Notes under the pieces: generated by a model | The model's database searches: none | What the model was told of the DNA's origin: nothing | What the model saw: only the letters and a program-made list of their open reading frames with translations | Sequence record: ON190024.1 | Length of the DNA: 64,000 nucleotides | Direction: 5' to 3' (one strand) | Position numbers and translations under genes: made by a program | Part shown: one piece after another, positions 3,828 through 19,328 of the stretch | How the letters are laid out: the number at the start of each line of letters is the position of its first letter | Numbering within the stretch: position 1 is the first letter of the stretch

Positions 3828-4358
3828 CTATTTGCGCCCTTTACGATTTGCCTTATTTGCTTTTCTTTTTGCTCTACGCAACTCTTTGCGTTTTGCGATT
3901 TTGTCTGCACGTCTAACTGCATCATAATCCGCAGCACACGACGCAGCAAACGCATCAGGCTTGAAAACGGGTTCTTGACCCACGTATCCCAAGATAGTGC
4001 CCTTAGCTTCGTTATACGCAACGTGTGAACGATGGGATGGGTCTGGGTTGATGTCAACGTGAACTTCAAACCCACGAGTACCACACATTGGCTTAACACG
4101 CAGGGCGGTTTCACCTGCTTTATAGACTTCATTCATCAAACGACTACGAATACCATCTTTACAAGACATGTACGCTGGTTCAGTTTCGATAGATTTGAAT
4201 ACTTGAGCGCCTTTACTACCCTCAAGGTGAATGATGATTACAGTAGCGTAACTAATCATATCACTCTTACGCTTGCTATCACACCCAACATAAATCGTAC
4301 TGTTCGGATGACTGTTATTGATAGCTGTTTCAATTGCTTCCCAATCGAACATTTTCAC
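3828..4358 (-). CDS. RNase H-like nuclease (YkuK/DUF458-like)
   Basis: IYVGCDS, RLMNEV, VHVDIN and KPDAFAASCAAD motifs with conserved acidic residues; basic C-tail. Confidence 0.7.
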   Translation of the reverse strand: MKMFDWEAIETAINNSHPNSTIYVGCDSKRKSDMISYATVIIIHLEGSKGAQVFKSIETEPAYMSCKDGIRSRLMNEVYKAGETALRVKPMCGTRGFEVHVDINPDPSHRSHVAYNEAKGTILGYVGQEPVFKPDAFAASCAADYDAVRRADKIAKRKELRRAKRKANKANRKGRK

Positions 4359-4403: not shown

Positions 4404-5840
4404 TTAAAAGCTGTAGCGATCAACGCCTACAGTTTTCAGCATGATCTTGACTGGCTCAAGCTCACCACCCAACAGTGAAGTCAGGATAGATGGGCTACAA
4501 CCCGATACCAGTGCAGTACCCGCTTCGCCAGCTTTAACCGGAACGTTGCCAAGACGACCACGAATGTTCCAGAAGACTAGTTGTGGCATTTCATAGCCAG
4601 CACGTGCGTACATAGCTTTGATTGCGTCGAAGTTTGCACGTTCGCCGCGACCGTACCAGCCACCACCAGTATTTGCTTGGTCGAATTCCATGTCGCTCAT
4701 GATAAGCAACTTAGTTGGCATTTCTTCTTGTGAAAGATTTGCACGTTTTGCACGTTCTAACAGAACGTTGAAGCACTTACCGATGTTTGTGCTCATGTCT
4801 TCGCCTGATCGATTCATGTTGTCAAGACGCTCTTTTAGTGAGCTACCGCGTAACTGGTGGAAGTGCGGATCGCTTGAGAACGAAATGAACTGATCTTTGA
4901 AGATGCCTTCATTGCGTTCAGCAACATAGATGCCAAGAGACATTGCAACTTGCTTACAAGTCACACCTGAACGATCTGTACCTGCGTTGATTGGCGTGCT
5001 CATAGAGCCAGACACGTCAACAACTGGGATGATGCGCTCATCAGAGCCTTCCATGTAGTTCGGCAGAGCCTTCCATTGCTCGTTCGCTACAGACGCATTA
5101 CCATGACTAACGCTCTTAACGACATCATATGGGAACAAGGCACCAGCGTTGATCTTCGCTTCACCTTTTTGAAGCGACTCGATGTAGCTTGTGTAACGAG
5201 CAGAAGCGTTACGACCGAATGCTTGTTGATAACGAGCCGACGCTACAGATGGCAACTTACCGAAGTCGATTGTATCCCATTCTTGCGCACACATCTTCTG
5301 TTCAACAGTGTCAGACAAAAGTGCTAGAATCTTACGCCACTGCTTCGCAGTTACGCCAAGAGACTTGATTGTGCGCTTGAACACATGACCGTTTTTGCTG
5401 TTCTCGCGTGGGAACCACTTCGCAGCGAGACTGTTCTTGTCGTTTACAATCGCATTTGACCACAATGTGATCGCGTCTTTTTCAAGACTTGTACCGAACG
5501 CAGAAATCAAGTCGTCGAAACGACCTAGTTCTGGAATTTTCGACATTACAGCACGAGCTACGTCAGGCTGCTCATTACAAAGCTTAGTGAATAGAGTACG
5601 GAAAGTACCACGTTCACCCGCACCACCGCGAACATCACGAGACCACAAAAGAATGCGTGTCGCTAGTTCTGGGTTTTCTGCAAACGCACGACCGAACAGT
5701 GTTTTAGACTGATCGTTACCACGCATAGCAGCAATACCGAAGAACAAGTTTAGACACTCGTTACCTGAAGTGCTGTGAGTAACTGCACCGTTTGCTGTAC
5801 GTGAATCGTTAGTGGTCATTGCGTTCATAAATGCTGACAT
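4404..5840 (-). CDS. DUF2828-family TROVE/Ro60-like protein with C-terminal vWA domain
   Basis: N-terminal NGAVTHSTSGNECLNLFF, WSRDVRGGAGER, GRFDDL and AAKWFPRE motifs. vWA MIDAS DVSGS plus MSDMEFD and VFWN. The Ro60/TROVE relationship is from family recall, not from a search. Confidence 0.75.
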   Translation of the reverse strand: MSAFMNAMTTNDSRTANGAVTHSTSGNECLNLFFGIAAMRGNDQSKTLFGRAFAENPELATRILLWSRDVRGGAGERGTFRTLFTKLCNEQPDVARAVMSKIPELGRFDDLISAFGTSLEKDAITLWSNAIVNDKNSLAAKWFPRENSKNGHVFKRTIKSLGVTAKQWRKILALLSDTVEQKMCAQEWDTIDFGKLPSVASARYQQAFGRNASARYTSYIESLQKGEAKINAGALFPYDVVKSVSHGNASVANEQWKALPNYMEGSDERIIPVVDVSGSMSTPINAGTDRSGVTCKQVAMSLGIYVAERNEGIFKDQFISFSSDPHFHQLRGSSLKERLDNMNRSGEDMSTNIGKCFNVLLERAKRANLSQEEMPTKLLIMSDMEFDQANTGGGWYGRGERANFDAIKAMYARAGYEMPQLVFWNIRGRLGNVPVKAGEAGTALVSGCSPSILTSLLGGELEPVKIMLKTVGVDRYSF

Positions 5841-6579: not shown

Positions 6580-6946
6580 CAATATATTCCTTAATCGGCT
6601 TAGAAAAGTGACGAATACAAGAACTGTCAAGTCGTTTACGACCATCACCATCTATATCAGGTAGTGTGTATTCGTCATTAAACGGCTGACCGCTTTCTTT
6701 CGCAATCTCATAGGCATCGGCTCGATTGAAGTATTCACCACAATAGTTGATAAACCCCTGACCGCGATCCCCGAGTTCGTTTCGATGTTCATATGTACAA
6801 CCTAGTTCTTTCAATAACTTAAAGACTGATTGCATGTTTCGACCGAAATGGCAGCTATCAGCAACAACAATGTCGCGCACTTCACCGTTCGGTAGTGTCA
6901 CTCGAATTGCATTAGCAGCAGACGATATTACATTGACGTGCGACAT
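6572..6946 (-). CDS. conserved phage hypothetical protein
   Basis: QGFINYCGEYFNRADAYEIAKESGQ resembles a common phage family of unknown function. Confidence 0.65.
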   Translation of the reverse strand: MSHVNVISSAANAIRVTLPNGEVRDIVVADSCHFGRNMQSVFKLLKELGCTYEHRNELGDRGQGFINYCGEYFNRADAYEIAKESGQPFNDEYTLPDIDGDGRKRLDSSCIRHFSKPIKEYIDG

Positions 6947-7284
6947 GTATCGTACCTCATAAAAATTGAACCGACGCGCTTATACTGACCAGAGTGAGAA
7001 AGCAACAGAGCCATTTTACTATGACCAACGGGATTGCTTGTCACTAGAACAACAGTGCGCGGAAAATTACGATGATCAATCGCATGAGAGAGAATATCAT
7101 ACCCCTCTCTACCAACATCATCACCTAGGTCATTATCCATGAATAGAGTGATGTCAGTTAGATTTGTGTGCTTGACGAAATTCATACCGTCTTCGAATGT
7201 TCGAATTACGAGTTTTTCATCATCACGTACGTAATCAGACGTGAACTTATCAATGTCGCGCTGATCATCAATCATGACGTGCAT
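6928..7284 (-). CDS. cyclic-phosphate-processing receiver-like domain protein (cREC-like)
   Basis: IDDQR ... MDNDLG ... GYDIL ... TSNPVG pattern of the stand-alone divergent receiver family linked to RNA repair. Confidence 0.7.
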   Translation of the reverse strand: MHVMIDDQRDIDKFTSDYVRDDEKLVIRTFEDGMNFVKHTNLTDITLFMDNDLGDDVGREGYDILSHAIDHRNFPRTVVLVTSNPVGHSKMALLLSHSGQYKRVGSIFMRYDTCRTSM

Positions 7285-11929: not shown

Positions 11930-12004
11930 TGGTGGACACGCAGGGAGTCGAACCCTATCTTCCTCATTGCAAGTGAGGCGCTTTCCCAATTAAGCTAACG
12001 GCCC
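11930..12004 (-). tRNA. tRNA-Ala(TGC), irregular acceptor stem
   Basis: Loop CTTGCAA and G3:U70 present; the acceptor needs a bulge to pair. Confidence 0.8.
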
Positions 12005-15154: not shown

Positions 15155-15523
15155 TTTGTTCTTTAACTTTGTTTATCATACTCTGCATTCAAAGTACGTT
15201 AAACAAAATTTTTTTGATTTCCTTCGCCCATAAAAAAGGACGCTACGTGCGTCCTCAAGTATACTTCTATGTTATACTATTGGACTACGTTTGTGGAGAC
15301 CACCCTTGTTTCGCACACGGATTCGCTAGATACACGAATTCTGAGCGCAGAAAATCGCTGCGTAAAATCATATCAGAATGTGTATTCGAATGTGTCATGG
15401 AAACTCTCTAAACGTTAAAATAAAAATGTTTTTGTTTGTATAATAGTACTTATAACATCAAATTTGACGATTTGCGGTATTTTCGCAGAAAATTGAAAAA
15501 AACTTCAACTTTCTGCGATTTTC

Positions 15524-15769
15524 TTATCGACCTAGGTGTTTTCGCTTGTTCATTTCAACGAGGATTTCATCGTTGTAATGACGGTTCAGTTCAACATACT
15601 TCTTGTGCTGATCTGAAGTCAACTCGTTGGTGTCATTCAGATGTTTCAAGAATCCAAGAGGTTTGCGAAACGACTTGCGATACTCGTTCAGACGCTCGTC
15701 AGTTAGATTATGCAGTTGTTTCGGAGTCAGTAACGTTTTATTGATGTCAAAACTCATGTTGTACCTCAC
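15524..15769 (-). CDS. hypothetical protein
   Basis: 81-aa ORF with GAGG SD. Confidence 0.6.
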   Translation of the reverse strand: MRYNMSFDINKTLLTPKQLHNLTDERLNEYRKSFRKPLGFLKHLNDTNELTSDQHKKYVELNRHYNDEILVEMNKRKHLGR

Positions 15770-15781
15770 TTGTTATAAAAT

Positions 15782-15897
15782 TGGTAGTCGGGGCTGGATT
15801 CGAACCAGCGACCACGTGCTTAACAGGCAATTGAAGGAGTGCTGGAGCGATACTTGTCAGTATCATTCTTCGTGCTCTACCACTGAGCTACCCGACT
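15782..15897 (-). ncRNA. tRNA-shaped RNA (Asn-GTT-like) with 41-nt insertion in the anticodon stem
   Basis: Removing 15830-15870 restores a 75-nt cloverleaf with CGTGC-CTGTTAA-GCACG arm and CCA. Confidence 0.8.
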
Positions 15898-15902
15898 ATG
15901 AA

Positions 15903-16424
15903 TTATTTAACTTTGAACTTCAAATTACGCCAGTCAAAGTTTCGTTTGTTCTTTGTGTTGTAGAACGTGCCCCAATCAATAGCAATCGGACAGTTCTTAC
16001 TACCTACACGAGCGATAAAGACATCGTGAGTCTCGCTGTAACGCTCTCTAAGCTCTTTTAAACGCTTATCGTAGTTAGCGATATACTCTGCACACGCTTT
16101 GTTGTAAGCTGCTTTAGAGAAGCGTTCGTCACTCGAAAATACATTACCCAGATAAGGTCGAATAACACGAACTCGTTCTTTAGACCAACCCATACTAAAG
16201 CTGTTTTCAATCTCACCTGAGATTTCACCAGTCTTCTTACATCTAGCAAGAATGACCCAGCAACGTTCACGCCGAAAATCTTTTCGTACGTACACGTTAA
16301 CGTGCTTGTCAATGTACTCTTGATAACGAGCGTTATACTCAGCACGCAGTTTATTGCGCACTTCAGGCGACATTGCAGCCCGTTCTTCTTTCGAAAACGC
16401 TTGTGCGAATTTCAATGGTTTCAT
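15903..16424 (-). CDS. hypothetical protein
   Basis: Start MKPLKF with GAGG SD; the upstream ATG in the ORF track lies inside a structured RNA. Confidence 0.7.
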   Translation of the reverse strand: MKPLKFAQAFSKEERAAMSPEVRNKLRAEYNARYQEYIDKHVNVYVRKDFRRERCWVILARCKKTGEISGEIENSFSMGWSKERVRVIRPYLGNVFSSDERFSKAAYNKACAEYIANYDKRLKELRERYSETHDVFIARVGSKNCPIAIDWGTFYNTKNKRNFDWRNLKFKVK

Positions 16425-16437
16425 TATAATTTCCTCT

Positions 16438-16677
16438 TGGCGCCGCTCGTGTGAATCGAACACACGTCAAACACAACACCTCGTCCACCCAATTAGAGTT
16501 TCGAAGTAAGAGCTAATCAGCATTTCGGAGCAGTCGAGCGTTATTTCTACGAGTGAGCTTTCGACAACTCACACGCACTTTCTACCCGGTCCCAGTGATT
16601 CGGTACCAACGCAGGTTGCGAACCTACGTCTGCACTAATGCTGGGAAAACACTGCGTATTGTACACCAGTTAGCGGC
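16438..16677 (-). ncRNA. 240-nt RNA with tRNA-like acceptor/T-arm and CCA end
   Basis: 5' GCCGCT pairs with 3' AGCGGC-G-CCA; T-arm CGTGTG-TTCGATT-CACACG; several internal hairpins. Confidence 0.7.
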
Positions 16678-16679
16678 AT

Positions 16680-16910
16680 TTAAAGATAGCTATCAAAGAC
16701 AGCATCATCAACTTCTTCAATATTGATGTCAGCGTAACACTCATTCGCAATTGCTTGAATTTCATCTATTGAAACTGTACCTGCGTACAATACAACAGCG
16801 TCGTTCGGAATCACGACATCACACATGTATTTGTTAAACATTGCAGTTCTGAAATCAGAATCAACAGAGTAACCGTGCATTGATGTGATAACTAGCAATT
16901 TATGTGACAT
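16680..16910 (-). CDS. hypothetical protein
   Basis: 76-aa ORF with GAGG SD under an early promoter. Confidence 0.65.
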   Translation of the reverse strand: MSHKLLVITSMHGYSVDSDFRTAMFNKYMCDVVIPNDAVVLYAGTVSIDEIQAIANECYADINIEEVDDAVFDSYL

Positions 16911-16940
16911 AATGTTTTCCTCGTGTAGTTGATAATGTGT

Positions 16941-16969
16941 ATACTACACGTTGATGAAACGCCTGTCAA
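16941..16969 (-). promoter_or_regulatory. sigma70-type early promoter
   Basis: TTGACA-17 nt-TAGTAT with A-rich upstream element. Confidence 0.8.
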
Positions 16970-16989
16970 CAACTTTTTCAAATTATTTT

Positions 16990-17066
16990 TGGTAGCCCCT
17001 CTCGGATTCGAACCGAGAACCTGACGATTATGAGTCGTCTGCTACTACCGTTACAGCTAAGGGGCT
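16990..17066 (-). tRNA. tRNA-CAT (probably Ile2, lysidine-type)
   Basis: Body resembles enterobacterial tRNA-Ile2 (GCCCCTTAGC...CGACTCATAATCG...GGGGC); CCA. Confidence 0.85.
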
Positions 17067-17433
17067 ATCGTTCTAGAAATCTACCGACTTTAGCAGCGAA
17101 GATGTTTGCTTCTTCTGCAATCAAAGCAGTTGATTTCATTTGATGAAAAGCGTCTTGTTGATGCAGAACATCTAGTTTACCAGCGCATTTCATCAATTCT
17201 TTTACTGATTGCATAATCTCAATGTTATCAAGCTGACTCGTGTCAGGGTGATGATTGAGACTATCCAAGACAGGGAGTACTTGTTGATAGTAACCCATGC
17301 CGATGAAGTTTATCATAAGTCTGTACTGCATTTCAACAGCAAATGTACAATATTTTCGAAGATTGCGTTTTACAATCTCACAGCGATGTAAGATACAATC
17401 AAGTTCGTCATTTATGTCATCAAACTTATTCAT
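17065..17433 (-). CDS. hypothetical protein
   Basis: Start MNKFDD with GAGG SD. Confidence 0.7.
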   Translation of the reverse strand: MNKFDDINDELDCILHRCEIVKRNLRKYCTFAVEMQYRLMINFIGMGYYQQVLPVLDSLNHHPDTSQLDNIEIMQSVKELMKCAGKLDVLHQQDAFHQMKSTALIAEEANIFAAKVGRFLER

Positions 17434-17447
17434 AAAACCTCGAAAAT

Positions 17448-17567
17448 TGGTGGAGAGTGATGGATTTGAACCACCGACCAAAAGATTTACCAGTTAAGGT
17501 TTGCAGCATGAATGCTTGTCAGTATTCTTTAACATTCTTTTGCTCTACCAGACTGAGCTAACTCTCC
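17448..17567 (-). ncRNA. tRNA-shaped RNA with expanded anticodon arm, CCA end
   Basis: GGAGAGT acceptor, D arm, AAAGA/TCTTT stem, insertion with GAATACT-GACA-AGCATTC-ATGCTGCAAAC, T arm, A-CCA. Confidence 0.8.
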
Positions 17568-17572
17568 ATTGT

Positions 17573-17683
17573 ATTACTACTTTGTTTCGCTTGTCAGGGC
17601 GTCGAAACGCTACCTAACCAAGGATTCGAACCTTTTAACCAACACCTCGCGAAAATTATTTTTCTCGTTGGCAAAGTAGTAAT
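17573..17683 (-). ncRNA. candidate ncRNA with 12-bp terminal helix and T-loop hairpin
   Basis: ATTACTACTTTG/CAAAGTAGTAAT; AAGG-TTCGAAT-CCTT; GCGT-TTCG-ACGC. Confidence 0.55.
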
Positions 17684-17690
17684 GTAAAAA

Positions 17691-17828
17691 CATATAGTTG
17701 CGGGTGCAGGATTCGAACCTACATCACGATCTTATGAATGATATGCGAAATTGATTGCCGTACAGATTCTTATCAGAATCAGTTTTGTGCTACGTGTGCT
17801 ACCACTTACACCAACCCGCAACTATATG
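17691..17828 (-). ncRNA. tRNA-shaped RNA with insertion and 15-bp extended acceptor, no CCA
   Basis: CATATAGTTGCGGGT/ACCCGCAACTATATG; insertion GATTCT-GATA-AGAATC-TGTACGGCAATC. Confidence 0.75.
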
Positions 17829-18074
17829 CTTTCGGGATGCTTACGCAGGTTCTTCTCTACGTAAGCACAGATCCTCAATGTATATTTTGCCTTAGCTAAT
17901 CACAACACAACCCAATATCGTGCGCTTTAATTACGGGATTGATGACCCGTTCGCATGTGATTAGCGTAAAAGTATGATTACGCACCTTTTCTTCTTCAAT
18001 GTCCAAGGCAAAGAGGACTATGAATACTAGTGCGAGAAGATATACAATCAAATTGCTCACCTCGCTTAATAAGT

Positions 18075-18221
18075 GAGAGTACATTGGTCGAGTGTAACGG
18101 AATCGAACCGTTCCCACGATCTCCCTATGATATGCGTAAATTGGTTGCTGAATATAATCATGTCTGATTACAGTATGCTACGTGTGCTGCCACTACACCA
18201 ACACTCGACCAATGTACTCTC
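18075..18221 (-). ncRNA. tRNA-shaped RNA with insertion and 21-bp extended acceptor, no CCA
   Basis: GAGAGTACATTGGTCGAGTGT/ACACTCGACCAATGTACTCTC; insertion TAATCA-GACA-TGATTA-TATTCAGCAACC; paralog of 17691-17828. Confidence 0.75.
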
Positions 18222-18222
18222 G

Positions 18223-18374
18223 ATATTTTAAATGTGCGCTACTTGCACGCCGACTGAGCGAATTTTAACTCAGCTAGTTTTTGATTGAGACCTCGTCCGC
18301 TAAGACTATTCCCTGCACGCCAGAACTTATACTGGCTCTATGTATTCATTGCGGCTAACGCACATTTAAAATAT
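18223..18374 (-). ncRNA. candidate ncRNA with 16-bp terminal inverted repeat
   Basis: ATATTTTAAATGTGCG/CGCACATTTAAAATAT enclosing GCCAG/CTGGC and CTGAG/CTCAG hairpins. Confidence 0.55.
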
Positions 18375-18488
18375 TACTCATCTTCAGCGAAGAGACAGAA
18401 ACGATGAGTCTAGTCTGTTTAATCAATGTTGTTCATCTTCAAGAAGAGGCGAGAACGATGAACTTAGCTCGCTTAATCAACTGTGTTA

Positions 18489-18516
18489 ATCTTATCAGCT
18501 TCTCAGCGAAAGTCAA
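18489..18516 (-). promoter_or_regulatory. stable-RNA promoter P2
   Basis: TTGACT-16 nt-TAAGAT. Confidence 0.75.
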
Positions 18517-18581
18517 CATCTTTTTTCAAAGATTTCATCGAGTTGAAAGTTTGTTTTCTGTCTCTCGACTCGATGAAATAC

Positions 18582-18609
18582 ATTCTACATCCTTTTCAGA
18601 TGAAGTCAA
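18582..18609 (-). promoter_or_regulatory. stable-RNA promoter P1
   Basis: TTGACT-16 nt-TAGAAT with AT-rich upstream element. Confidence 0.75.
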
Positions 18610-18625
18610 CAACTATTTTGAATTT

Positions 18626-18889
18626 TTAAACGGAAATGATAATACCGCTTTCAGTCTCGCCTCGTTCAAGCGCAGCGTGCTTGATCTGAAGTTGTGATAC
18701 TGCTTGCTGAAGTTCAATAATAGCTTTGTCATAAAGCTTGTTGTTCTCTTTAAGCAAAGCAATCTGATCGGTCTGCATACCAATGATGTACGTTAGTAGA
18801 ACAACGTTCTCATCAGTAGTCAGTGTTTCAGGCGCTTCATTGTACTTCTTCAGTACCGCTTCGGTAGATAGATCAGTCATTATTAGCAA
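18626..18889 (-). CDS. hypothetical coiled-coil protein
   Basis: 87-aa ORF downstream of 57B. Confidence 0.65.
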   Translation of the reverse strand: MLIMTDLSTEAVLKKYNEAPETLTTDENVVLLTYIIGMQTDQIALLKENNKLYDKAIIELQQAVSQLQIKHAALERGETESGIIISV

Positions 18890-19328
18890 CCCATTCTAGA
18901 TCTAGTGGTTCGATATATTCATCGACAAGGCGAACCTCTGTATTGATGAACATAGGTGTGATTACGTCGTCATAAGACAATGTGACGTGCGGAGTATAGT
19001 CAGGGTAATCGTGAGTACCACCGATAGAGATAAGGTCTTCGTGACGTTCTACAAGAGCAGGACATGACATCTTAGCAACGACCGCGTGTTTACCGTCTTG
19101 CGTTTTCCAACAGTCAACTTGTTCAACAGTGGCAACGAAAGTGGTATCTACAACAGGCACATCAATTTGCTTACGACTATAAAGCACAGTCACGTGAAAT
19201 TTATCTGGATCTAACGGATTTTTTAGACGAAGCGTTTTTTGCAAGCGAACTAGCTCTTGCTTACTTGCTTCGTCTAATTTGATACCAACGTAAGTTCCCT
19301 GACTCTCAAGGAACTTAGATAGTTTCAT
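18873..19328 (-). CDS. 57B: gp57B-like 2H phosphoesterase (Acb1-type anti-CBASS nuclease)
   Basis: Two HxT motifs (FHVTVLYS, PHVTLSY) and syntenic with 57A and gene 1. Confidence 0.85.
   Translation of the reverse strand: MKLSKFLESQGTYVGIKLDEASKQELVRLQKTLRLKNPLDPDKFHVTVLYSRKQIDVPVVDTTFVATVEQVDCWKTQDGKHAVVAKMSCPALVERHEDLISIGGTHDYPDYTPHVTLSYDDVITPMFINTEVRLVDEYIEPLDLEWVANND

What the first reader, a model, noticed from the sequence alone, without database searches (positions are those of the whole stretch)
15782..18221. Four tRNA-shaped RNAs carrying the same insertion module in the anticodon arm
Elements 15782-15897, 17448-17567, 17691-17828 and 18075-18221 have acceptor, D and T arms plus an inserted hairpin with a GA(C/T)A loop whose stems covary (GATACT/AGTATC, GAATACT/AGCATTC, GATTCT/AGAATC, TAATCA/TGATTA), followed by the CNGCA motif. 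In three elements the insertion splits the 5' strand of the anticodon stem and leaves a residual anticodon-like hairpin. Deleting 15830-15870 gives a perfect 75-nt tRNA-Asn(GTT). Topologically this resembles a circular permutation of YrlA-type Y RNA, with the protein-binding helix capped by a loop and the acceptor ends free. tRNA scanners would call these pseudo-tRNAs.
Basis: partly seen in the sequence, partly recalled or inferred. Interest (0 to 1): 0.85.

Follow-up and report, generated by a model that had tools for sequence, protein, structure and literature searches.

The report
Permuted Y-RNA-like tRNA mimics in vibriophage
Four tRNA-shaped RNAs in a KVP40-type vibriophage carry a hairpin-plus-CNGCA module, and they are rearranged relatives of Y RNAs, the small RNAs that partner the Ro60 protein; the phage encodes a Ro60-like protein, which points to a large unrecognised phage and bacterial RNA-protein system.

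Summary
The window is Vibrio phage PVA8, a KVP40-like phage. E1-E4 lie on the minus strand and have acceptor, D and T arms. Each carries a 41-50 nt insert in the anticodon arm: a 6-7 bp hairpin (GAYA loop, covarying stems), then CNGCA.

The window ORF 4404-5840(-) (Pfam DUF2828+DUF7788) models as a Ro60-like ring plus vWA domain; its top Foldseek PDB hits are Ro60 structures. In other phage contigs and bacterial genome contigs, RNAs with the same helix, a 3-5 nt spacer and CAGCAA sit directly beside DUF2828 genes on the same strand (p 2e-9 and 5e-41).

Those RNAs have YrlA architecture. Their ends form the helix, which encloses a T arm, a closed acceptor stem and a D arm. Rfam's YrlA model matches three of them below its threshold. 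E1-E4 are circular permutations of these RNAs: the helix is capped by a loop and the acceptor end is free.

Most likely E1-E4 are Y-RNA-like partners of the phage Ro60-like protein, not decoding tRNAs or intron-bearing tRNAs. Binding and function are untested. I rate this a new variant of a known kind.

The parts
15782..15897 (-). E1: tRNA-shaped RNA with an encoded CCA. It has a 41-nt insert (15830-15870) between tRNA positions 28/29. Hairpin H1 is at 15849-15864, CAGCA at 15840-15844. The residual anticodon hairpin is UGC-CUGUUAA-GCA.
   Evidence: Sequence. Rfam tRNA 49.8 bits. Model R1, trained without E1, scores it 64.2 bits. The exon-only form is a 75-nt Asn(GTT) cloverleaf. It is 97-100% conserved where the flanks are about 86% identical, and K566 shows compensatory acceptor and T-stem changes.
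17448..17567 (-). E2: tRNA-shaped RNA with an encoded CCA. The anticodon stem AAAGA/UCUUU is intact. The module follows a GUU-containing loop: H1 at 17510-17527, CUGCA at 17502-17506, then a second small hairpin.
   Evidence: Rfam tRNA 55.8 bits with a 45-nt insert. R1 46.5 bits. Relatives are aligned. Homologue L272 11895-12014 carries H1 plus UAUUCAGCA.
17691..17828 (-). E3: tRNA-shaped core at 17699-17820 with an 8-bp leader/trailer extension and no encoded CCA. The insert is at 28/29, with H1 at 17765-17780 and CGGCA at 17756-17760. The residual anticodon loop has 8 nt (AUUCAUAA).
   Evidence: R1 123 bits. MFE z-score -5.6. H1 covaries among relatives (GAUUCU/AGAAUC, CAAGCU/AGUUUG, CAAGUU/AGCUUG).
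18075..18221 (-). E4: tRNA-shaped core at 18089-18207 with an encoded ACCA. A 21-bp helix pairs the leader (18201-18221) with the trailer (18075-18095). The insert is at 28/29, with H1 at 18155-18170 and CAGCAA at 18145-18150. The residual loop is AUAGGGA.
   Evidence: R1 119 bits. MFE z-score -7.2. There are 5 compensatory changes in the long helix and a new H1 stem (CUUACU/AGUAAG) in K566.
4404..5840 (-). Gene for a 478-aa Ro60-like protein (HEAT-repeat ring plus vWA domain with MIDAS motif DVSGSM). It is the proposed protein partner of E1-E4.
   Evidence: Pfam DUF2828 (1e-29) and DUF7788 (1e-45). PHROG 850 'RNA-binding protein'. AF2 model with pLDDT 79 and pTM 0.79. Foldseek top hits are Ro60 of Thermus phage phiLo, Xenopus Ro and Ro60/pre-5S complexes (E 4e-7 to 1e-4, TM 0.50-0.57, full length).
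3828..4358 (-). RNase H-like protein (PF04308), immediately downstream of the Ro60-like gene. It may belong to the same RNA-handling neighbourhood.
   Evidence: Pfam 5.9e-17. The association is by position only.
6928..7284 (-). cREC (cyclic-phosphate-processing receiver) domain protein, 1.1 kb upstream of the Ro60-like gene.
   Evidence: Pfam PF20274, 2.9e-15. Role in RNA-end healing as proposed in PMC7824862. The association is by position only.

Best explanation
E1-E4, and a fifth paralogue in KVP40, are Y-RNA-like tRNA mimics rather than decoding tRNAs.

Each has a real tRNA body, so the host tRNA machinery can probably trim and stabilise it; E1, E2 and E4 encode CCA. The anticodon arm carries a module: a 6-7 bp helix whose end is C-G/U-A closed by a GNNA loop, then 3-4 nt, then single-stranded CNGCA(A).

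This module is the same helix-plus-CAGCAA element that RNAs encoded directly beside DUF2828 Ro60-like genes form with their 5' and 3' ends. E1-E4 are therefore circular permutations of those YrlA-type RNAs.

Proposed mechanism:
1. The phage Ro60-like ring (ORF 4404-5840) binds the helix-CNGCA module.
2. The exposed tRNA-shaped domain then engages a tRNA-binding or RNA-decay/repair factor. Known Ro60-Y RNA particles recruit PNPase in this way.
3. This would serve RNA quality control or repair during infection.

Shown here: the structure and its covariation, homology with permutation, the Ro60-like fold of the protein, and gene-RNA adjacency in relatives.
Inferred: binding of E1-E4 by the protein, and the downstream function.
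For: Structure and covariation of the module are shown.

The Ro60-like fold of the window protein is shown.

Gene-RNA linkage:
- In phage contigs centred on DUF2828 genes, CAGCAA..GGTTCGA elements lie within 600 nt of the gene in 23 of 46 cases, against 79 of 662 for other T loops (odds ratio 7.4, p 2e-9). 46 of 47 are on the gene's strand.
- In bacterial genome contigs, 49 of 50 such elements lie within 1.3 kb upstream or 0.7 kb downstream on the gene's strand (p 5e-41), in 32 of 80 loci.
- Module-bearing tRNA-likes of the E type follow the gene directly in L272. They lie 2.6 kb downstream in L277, a 233,234-bp contig the size of Aeromonas phage Aeh1.
- Permuted units sit next to the gene in L110, L143, L311, L313 and L314.

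Architecture of the adjacent RNAs:
- A terminal 7-bp helix is perfect in 32 of 39 unique elements, against 7 of 39 in an offset control.
- The order is helix, CAGCAA, T arm, closed acceptor stem, D arm.
- Rfam YrlA matches at 37.5, 42.6 and 47.1 bits, with E from 1e-4 to 2e-7.

Permutation homology is shown.

Features that do not fit decoding tRNAs:
- E3 relatives have 8-nt anticodon loops, and the loops vary between relatives while the module is conserved.
- The E4 leader/trailer helix occludes its CCA and is kept by compensatory changes.

Precedents: Ro60 with Y RNAs encoded nearby in more than 250 bacteria and phages (PMC4201824); phage phiLo Ro60 bound to Yrl RNAs and PNPase (PMC12135203).
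Against: - No binding data exist.
- In the window the Ro60-like gene is 9.9-12.4 kb from E1-E4, not adjacent.
- Only the 64-kb window was examined, not the whole genome.
- YrlA's GNCGAA motif is absent, and Rfam YrlA gives no hit in window 15200-18700 even at E<=10.
- DUF2828 genes often sit inside tRNA clusters, so part of the phage co-localisation could be synteny. The bacterial loci and the comparison with other T loops argue against this being the whole story.
- For distant E-type carriers (L019, L130, L132, L134, L135) the fetched DNA does not show whether a DUF2828 gene is present.
- E1 keeps a perfectly canonical, invariant Asn anticodon hairpin, which a pure protein-binding scaffold would not obviously need.
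Confidence: 0.6

Rival explanations
1. E1-E4 are intron-containing tRNA genes. The 41-50 nt insert would be excised by a host or phage endonuclease and the halves joined by a phage RNA ligase, giving ordinary tRNAs (Asn GUU from E1 and E2).
For: - Removing the insert from E1 gives a perfect cloverleaf.
- Residual anticodon loops mostly keep U33 and a purine at 37. E4 relatives keep G36-G37 while positions 34/35 vary.
- E2's insert pairs with its anticodon loop, as in eukaryal pre-tRNAs.
- CCA is encoded in three of the four.
- 'Enigmatic introns' are reported in Lak megaphage tRNAs (bioRxiv 10.1101/356790).
- The neighbourhood includes a 2H phosphoesterase and a cREC protein.
Against: - The insert is homologous to the terminal helix and motif of free-standing YrlA-like RNAs, which are not introns.
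- The insert is the most conserved part across distant phages, and its position moves between members (26/27, 28/29, 29/30, 31/32, in the loop).
- By inspection no bulge-helix-bulge motif can be drawn, and Rfam gives no group I intron or ribozyme hit.
- No intron-less allele of E1 exists among 50,697 phage records.
- E3 has 8-nt loops.
- The E3/E4 leader-trailer helices covary.
- The phage already has a separate tRNA-Asn with the G73 discriminator, whereas E1 and E2 have A73.
Confidence: 0.15
2. The module works independently of the Ro60-like protein. For example, it could be an RNA-processing signal, or the RNAs could be decoys or sensors for host tRNA-targeting nucleases, with the tRNA body as bait.
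For: - In some phages the helix+CAGCAA element sits in the 5' leader of otherwise tRNA-like genes (L313 8501-8605, L314 8388-8489), which looks like a processing signal.
- Anticodon loops diversify between relatives: E4 has AGG or UAG, and an L143 relative has UCG.
- Phage tRNAs are known to counter anticodon nucleases (PMC10264068, listed).
Against: The tight, strand-specific adjacency to DUF2828 genes in bacterial contigs is hard to explain without a functional link. No nuclease or processing enzyme is implicated by any result here.
Confidence: 0.2
3. E1-E4 are decayed pseudo-tRNAs disrupted by a small selfish insertion and have no function.
For: Public records annotate them as pseudo-tRNAs. 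ARAGORN rejects them.
Against: - They are 97-100% conserved where the flanking DNA is about 86% identical.
- Compensatory changes occur in every helix.
- The family is present in distant phages and in bacterial contigs.
Confidence: 0.03

Closest known systems
YrlA-type bacterial/phage Y RNAs (Rfam RF02553), partners of Ro60/Rsr
   Same: - A tRNA-like domain with genuine D and T arms.
- A helix followed by a short conserved single-stranded motif, as the presumed protein-binding module.
- Encoded in genomes that carry a Ro60-fold protein.
- Permuted relatives sit beside that gene on the same strand and match the YrlA model at 37-47 bits.
- M. smegmatis YrlA is cut by RNase P and receives CCA (PMC4201824), which gives a free acceptor end like that of E1-E4.
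   Different: - Topology: E1-E4 run in normal tRNA order with an open acceptor end and a capped module helix in the anticodon arm.
- The motif is CNGCA(A) rather than GNCGAAN0-1G.
- The protein is DUF2828/DUF7788, with no sequence-level TROVE hit.
- E1-E4 lie 10-12 kb from the gene.
- There are 4-5 paralogues per genome.
Thermus phage phiLo Ro60 with Yrl1/Yrl2 (PMC12135203; PDB 9L5Y)
   Same: A phage-encoded Ro60-fold protein, which is the best structural match to the window protein, with phage-encoded Y-like RNAs. It forms a complex with host PNPase.
   Different: The phiLo RNAs have the classical architecture (terminal stem, bulge, CGAA) and lie directly upstream of the gene. They have no tRNA-order scaffold.
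'Enigmatic introns' in tRNA genes of Lak megaphages and other huge phages (bioRxiv 10.1101/356790)
   Same: Over-long phage tRNA genes with conserved inserts in the anticodon region. Bacterial tRNA scanners reject them.
   Different: Those inserts were placed by eukaryote-mode tRNAscan and have intron-less alleles. No relation to Ro60 or CAGCAA is reported, and I did not compare sequences.
T4 RNAC/RNAD (species 1 and 2 RNAs)
   Same: Stable small RNAs of unknown function encoded in the tRNA region of a T4-type phage (PMC3014915, PMC9697503).
   Different: No sequence or structure comparison was made here. T4 is not known to me to encode a DUF2828 protein (from memory, not tested).
Dictyostelium Class I RNAs (Rfam RF01414)
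   Same: A short terminal stem, an 11-nt motif CCUUACAGCAA next to the 5' stem strand, and a 3' CUGU (PMC7919456). The DUF2828-linked RNAs have a stem, YUUA-CAGCAA, then a stem and UGU. The Rfam model aligns to L385 across these features.
   Different: - The match is weak (16.7 bits, E 0.9).
- Class I RNAs are about 60 nt with no tRNA-like domain.
- Their known binder is an RRM protein.
- No link to DUF2828 was tested.

Membership tests
Canonical decoding tRNA | Acceptor, D and T arms with conserved tertiary nucleotides | tested here: met
   Rfam tRNA scores 49.8 bits (E1) and 55.8 bits (E2) over model positions 1-71. For E3 and E4 the arms are supported by the R1 model and covariation, but Rfam tRNA gives no hit.
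Canonical decoding tRNA | Continuous 5-bp anticodon stem with a 7-nt loop | tested here: not met
   A 41-50 nt insert lies inside the anticodon arm. E3's loop has 8 nt. ARAGORN calls none of the four.
YrlA / Y RNA (RF02553) | Encoded near (within about 4 kb) a Ro60 orthologue and on the same strand | tested here: inconclusive
   The window has a Ro60-fold gene on the same strand, but 9.9-12.4 kb away. Permuted homologues are adjacent to the gene in many other loci.
YrlA / Y RNA (RF02553) | Terminal 5'/3' helix carrying the GNCGAAN0-1G motif | tested here: not met
   In E1-E4 the helix is a capped hairpin and the motif is CNGCA(A).
YrlA / Y RNA (RF02553) | Score at or above the Rfam gathering threshold (69 bits) | tested here: not met
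   No YrlA hit in window 15200-18700 at E<=10. Permuted relatives score 37.5-47.1 bits.
YrlA / Y RNA (RF02553) | tRNA-like domain in the order T arm, closed acceptor stem, D arm | tested here: not met
   E1-E4 have normal tRNA order. The relatives L391, L346, L385, L311 and L110 have the YrlA order.
YrlA / Y RNA (RF02553) | Physically bound by Ro60 | not testable with these tools
   Needs EMSA, co-immunoprecipitation or CLIP.
Ro60/TROVE protein (for ORF 4404-5840) | HEAT-repeat ring plus C-terminal vWA domain with a MIDAS motif | tested here: met
   The AF2 model (pLDDT 79) matches Ro60 structures over the full length (TM 0.50-0.57, probability 1.0). A DVSGSM motif is present. There is no sequence-level Pfam TROVE hit.
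Archaeal/eukaryal-type tRNA intron | Bulge-helix-bulge motif at the exon-intron junctions | tested here: not met
   By inspection of the E1 and E2 junction sequences, no 3-4-3 BHB can be drawn in either orientation.
Group I intron in tRNA | Catalytic core matched by Rfam Intron_gpI, more than 200 nt long | tested here: not met
   No hit in the region, and the inserts are only 41-50 nt. The model does detect a real group I intron in L132.
Mobile or optional intron | Intron-less alleles in close relatives | tested here: not met
   The exon-only E1 query finds no uninterrupted copy above 83% identity in 50,697 phage records.

The most novel reading that the evidence does not exclude
The helix-YUUACAGCAA module may be the recognition element of a very large, unrecognised ribonucleoprotein family built on DUF2828-type Ro60 homologues. 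More than 7,000 protein clusters were detected, in phages and in gut Firmicutes contigs. In this family the RNA exists in two interconvertible topologies: YrlA-like, and tRNA-ordered as in E1-E4.

Dictyostelium Class I RNAs are defined by the same signature (terminal stem, CCUUACAGCAA, 3' CUGU). They could therefore be eukaryotic members of this family, which would give these orphan developmental RNAs a Ro60-like partner.
Probability: 0.2. Interest if true: 0.92.

Novelty: new variant of a known kind. Interest (0 to 1): 0.8.

Why it matters
Y RNAs and Ro60 are conserved from bacteria to humans, where Ro60 is a lupus/Sjogren autoantigen. How Y RNAs evolved from tRNAs and what they recruit are still open questions.

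This locus shows a natural circular permutation between a Y RNA and a tRNA-ordered molecule. It links thousands of DUF2828 proteins to a defined RNA motif. It also explains pseudo-tRNAs that have been in the KVP40 record since it was deposited.

The system is tractable: a culturable phage, 4-5 paralogous RNAs and one protein. It could be used to ask what the tRNA-like half of a Y RNA is for, and whether phages use Ro60 particles in RNA repair or in conflicts over tRNA cleavage.

Tried and rejected
- My first IMG/VR pattern (GCACACGTAGCA..GCAA) was too loose. It returned 119 or more stretches, and only one of the three that kept a T-loop-like motif nearby was a real family member.
- The pattern for the E2/E5 module returned 88 hits, none in a tRNA context.
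- I considered box C/D K-loops, hammerhead, twister, pistol, hatchet and hairpin ribozymes, preQ1 aptamers, CRISPR-repeat mimics and an anticodon-stem-loop mimic for the hairpin. None fits the conserved positions, and Rfam at E<=10 gives nothing.
- I looked for a pseudoknot or closing helix between the UAGCA, CAGCAA and GCAU segments of the insert. Only a 2-bp GC/GC pairing is universal, so I claim nothing.
- I considered that CAGCAA pairs with the anticodon loop. That is true only for GUU-type loops (L135 6720), not in general.
- The CTGAYAAG motif is not significantly enriched in the window (9 found against 4.2 expected; 4 of 100 shuffles reach 9).
- The Rfam YrlA alignment pairs CAGCAA with the 3' U-rich tail. 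This competes with the better-supported X/X' helix, so I do not adopt it.
- Literature searches for KVP40 pseudo-tRNAs, phage tRNA introns and T4 RNAC/RNAD gave no direct prior description.
Full report
**Identity of the window.** Bases 15200-18700 are 100% identical to Vibrio phage PVA8 and 99% identical to KVP40, a T4-like phage of the genus Schizotequatrovirus. All tRNA genes lie on the minus strand. ARAGORN finds 27 between 9484 and 17066, and none of them is one of the four elements.

**The observation.** Read on the minus strand, each element has a 7-bp acceptor stem, a D arm with the GG dinucleotide, and a GGTTCGA-type T arm (GGTTCAA in E2).
- Rfam's tRNA model matches E1 (49.8 bits) and E2 (55.8 bits) end to end, skipping 54 and 45 nt in the anticodon arm.
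- Deleting 15830-15870 gives a 75-nt tRNA-Asn(GTT) cloverleaf.
- In E1, E3 and E4 the insert sits between tRNA positions 28 and 29. What follows it is a 3-bp stem with a 7-8-nt loop, which stacks on pairs 27-43 and 28-42.
- In E2 the 5-bp anticodon stem is intact, and the module follows an AUGUUAA loop.
- E1, E2 and E4 encode CCA; E3 does not.
- E3 and E4 have extra leader/trailer helices, 8 bp and 14 bp beyond the acceptor stem.
- Public records call these genes tRNA-Pseudo-3/-4 (KVP40) or tRNA-OTHER (phi-pp2).
- KVP40 has a fifth member, Pseudo-5. The window phage instead has a different structured element at 17570-17690.

**Conservation and covariation.** E1 and E4 are 97-100% identical in relatives whose flanking DNA is about 86% identical. 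The K566/D480 group is about 76-88% identical and supplies compensatory changes in the acceptor, T, H1 and leader/trailer helices.

I built a covariance model (R1) from 15 E3/E4-type sequences, including distant IMG/VR contigs. E1 was not in the training set, yet R1 scores it at 64 bits. The best ordinary tRNA scores 50 bits.

On the resulting alignment of 22 distinct sequences:
- 97.6% of cells pair.
- 5 of the 6 H1 pairs change on both sides.
- The covariation score is 0.79, against 0.18 in shuffles (0 of 500 reach it) and 0.07-0.12 when partners are slid.

The module is therefore a selected RNA structure.

**Where the module occurs.** Related tRNA-like genes in other large phage contigs carry the same hairpin followed by (U)AUU-CAGCA(A). 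The position within the anticodon arm differs between them: 26/27, 28/29, 29/30, 31/32, or inside the loop. The anticodon loops are variable:
- E4 relatives: AUAGGGA, AUUAGGA
- an L143 relative: AUUCGGA
- E3 relatives: AUUCAUAA, AUUUCCAA, AUUCUAA

The module is the constant part; the putative decoding part is not. The one exception is E1, whose loop is invariant.

**A Ro60-like protein.** A comparison of ORFs between the distant loci and the window found one shared protein, window ORF 4404-5840(-).
- It matches Pfam DUF2828 and DUF7788, and PHROG 850 'RNA-binding protein'.
- It has more than 7,000 relatives in the protein database.
- An AlphaFold model built on 29 homologues has pLDDT 79 and pTM 0.79.
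- Its best PDB matches, over the full length, are Ro60 of Thermus phage phiLo, Xenopus Ro, and Ro60/pre-5S rRNA complexes (E 4e-7 to 1e-4, TM 0.50-0.57). Isolated vWA domains follow.
- It carries a DVSGSM MIDAS motif.
- Its neighbours include an RNase H-like protein (PF04308) and a cREC domain protein.
- gp57B, near E4, is an Acb1-type 2H phosphoesterase.

**Linkage between the protein and the RNA motif.**
- I fetched 158 phage loci centred on DUF2828 genes. The pattern CAGCAA, then 18-62 nt, then GGTTCGA occurs 47 times, 46 of them on the gene's strand. It occurs 3 times in 195 unrelated viral loci.
- Those genes often lie inside tRNA clusters, so I compared distances within the same loci. 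23 of 46 motif elements lie within 600 nt of the gene, against 79 of 662 other T loops (odds ratio 7.4, p 2e-9).
- I then fetched 80 bacterial genome contigs encoding DUF2828 proteins, mostly Lachnospiraceae and Clostridia MAGs. 49 of 50 helix+CAGCAA+T-loop elements lie within 1.3 kb upstream or 0.7 kb downstream on the gene's strand. That region is 13.9% of the search space (binomial p 5e-41). 32 of the 80 loci have at least one element, often 2-4 in tandem.

**Architecture of the gene-adjacent RNAs.** They read as follows:

5'-(U)UUAGGNNN [X] - 3-5 nt - CAGCAA - linker - T arm - acceptor-like stem closed by a loop - D arm - linker - [X' = NNNCCUG]UU-3'

- X and X' form a perfect 7-bp helix in 32 of 39 unique elements, against 7 of 39 in an offset control. 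The helix sequence varies freely.
- This is the YrlA plan described by Chen et al. 2014 (PMC4201824).
- Rfam's YrlA model matches L385 794-904 (37.5 bits), L391 4937-5038 (47.1 bits) and L391 4595-4709 (42.6 bits). E-values range from 1e-4 to 2e-7. All are below the 69-bit gathering score.

**Circular permutation.**
- In L311 and L110 the homologue of the E4 3' half precedes the homologue of the E4 5' half, with local scores of 40-47; in L313 and L314 the 3' half matches (44 and 29) but the 5' half (20 and 27) is within the shuffle range. Shuffles score 16-18 (sd 3).
- One L391 unit, cut in its acceptor loop and rejoined at X'/X with GACA, aligns to E1 with 82 identical positions. The score is 39.5, against 22.5 in native order and 5.9 (sd 2.2) for shuffles. 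Its D arm and T arm are identical to those of E1.
- The end of the helix (C-G, U-A, then G) is conserved in both topologies.
- In L313 the capped hairpin has the loop GUUAACUUU. That is the usual 3' tail (GUUAA) fused to the usual 5' lead (UUU).
- In tandem arrays the two reading frames coexist. Rfam's tRNA model reads several bacterial units as 115-134-nt tRNAs with an insert.

H1 of E1-E4 is therefore the Y-RNA terminal helix, capped by a loop, and CNGCA is the Y-RNA motif.

**Interpretation.** The best-supported reading is that E1-E4 are tRNA-ordered Y-RNA homologues whose module is bound by the phage Ro60-like protein. Known Ro60-Y RNA particles tether Ro60 to PNPase. In Salmonella they belong to an RNA-repair operon that responds to damaged tRNAs (PMC4201824; PMC7790460, listed; PMC12135203).

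M. smegmatis YrlA is cleaved by RNase P and receives CCA. After that cleavage a YrlA-type RNA and an E-type RNA would have the same overall shape, with a free acceptor end and the module helix where the anticodon arm is. This suggests that shape is what matters.

Binding, partners and biological role are inferred, not shown.

**Rivals.**
- Splicing is the main rival. It is weakened by homology of the insert to non-intronic RNAs, the shifting position of the insert, the absence of a BHB or ribozyme signature, the absence of intron-less alleles, the 8-nt loops, and the covarying leader/trailer helices.
- A Ro60-independent role, as a processing signal or nuclease decoy, remains possible.
- Simple pseudogene decay is excluded by the conservation and covariation.

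**Limits.**
- Only the 64-kb window of this phage was examined.
- In this phage the gene and the RNAs are 10-12 kb apart.
- Loci within each collection are not all independent.
- My motif detectors are strict and miss divergent members.
- E-values from R1 are rough.

Noticed in passing
L385 786-894 (and the DUF2828-linked RNAs generally): Rfam's Dictyostelium Class I RNA model (consensus GaUcuCCUUACAGCAA...GagAuCUG) aligns to the phage element GGAUA-CUUACAGCAA...GUAUCCUG at 16.7 bits (E 0.9). Class I RNAs are defined by a short terminal stem, this 11-nt motif and a 3' CUGU, and were reported as unique to dictyostelids (PMC7919456). The phage and bacterial RNAs beside DUF2828 genes share the same signature. 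Whether dictyostelids encode DUF2828 proteins was not tested.
   Followed up: partly
window 17570-17690 (-): A structured element lies between E2 and E3. It has a 12-bp terminal helix (AUUACUACUUUG/CAAAGUAGUAAU), a T arm (AAGG-UUCGAAU-CCUU), a UUCG hairpin and a CUGACAAG sequence, but no CAGCAA. It occupies the place where KVP40 has the fifth module-bearing tRNA-like gene (Pseudo-5, L001 9383-9494). ValKK3 has both.
   Followed up: partly
window 16440-16680 (-): A roughly 235-nt RNA candidate lies between two small ORFs. Its ends form a tRNA-like acceptor stem (GCCGCU/AGCGGC-G-CCA) next to a 3' T arm. VS2, QD01 and CZ01 show compensatory acceptor and T-stem changes. There is a weak partial beta_tmRNA hit (14.8 bits). 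ARAGORN does not call it a tmRNA.
   Followed up: partly
window 18873-19328 (-): The gp57B homologue just upstream of E4 matches the Pfam Acb1 family (anti-CBASS 2H phosphodiesterase, 1.7e-46). Several records annotate it as 'RNA ligase'.
   Followed up: no
window 11933-12004 (-): Rfam calls a tRNA here (44.9 bits) with a UGC (Ala) anticodon, but ARAGORN misses it. It corresponds to KVP40 tRNA-Pseudo-1.
   Followed up: no
L019 611-771 (-): A tRNA-Tyr(GUA)-like gene has an insert of about 88 nt after the anticodon loop and lacks the hairpin-CAGCAA module. It is a second, different kind of over-long phage tRNA gene in the same contig that carries E-type elements.
   Followed up: no
L447 2193-2842, L414 2594-2833, L452 2630-2900 and similar bacterial loci: Two to four tandem module-bearing units lie directly upstream of DUF2828 genes in Lachnospiraceae and Clostridia contigs. 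They can be read either as YrlA-type units or as tRNAs with an insert. This suggests how one topology could evolve into the other by a shift of processing sites.
   Followed up: partly
window 18056-18077 (-) and 18582-18609 (-): A sigma-70-like promoter match (TTGACT-16-TAGAAT) lies about 360 nt upstream of E4, and a weak terminator-like hairpin lies right after E4. These are consensus matches only.
   Followed up: no
L134 4208-4633, L135 5114-5539, L323 2006-2297: Permuted tmRNA genes lie inside the tRNA clusters of the distant phage contigs that carry E-type elements or DUF2828 genes.
   Followed up: no
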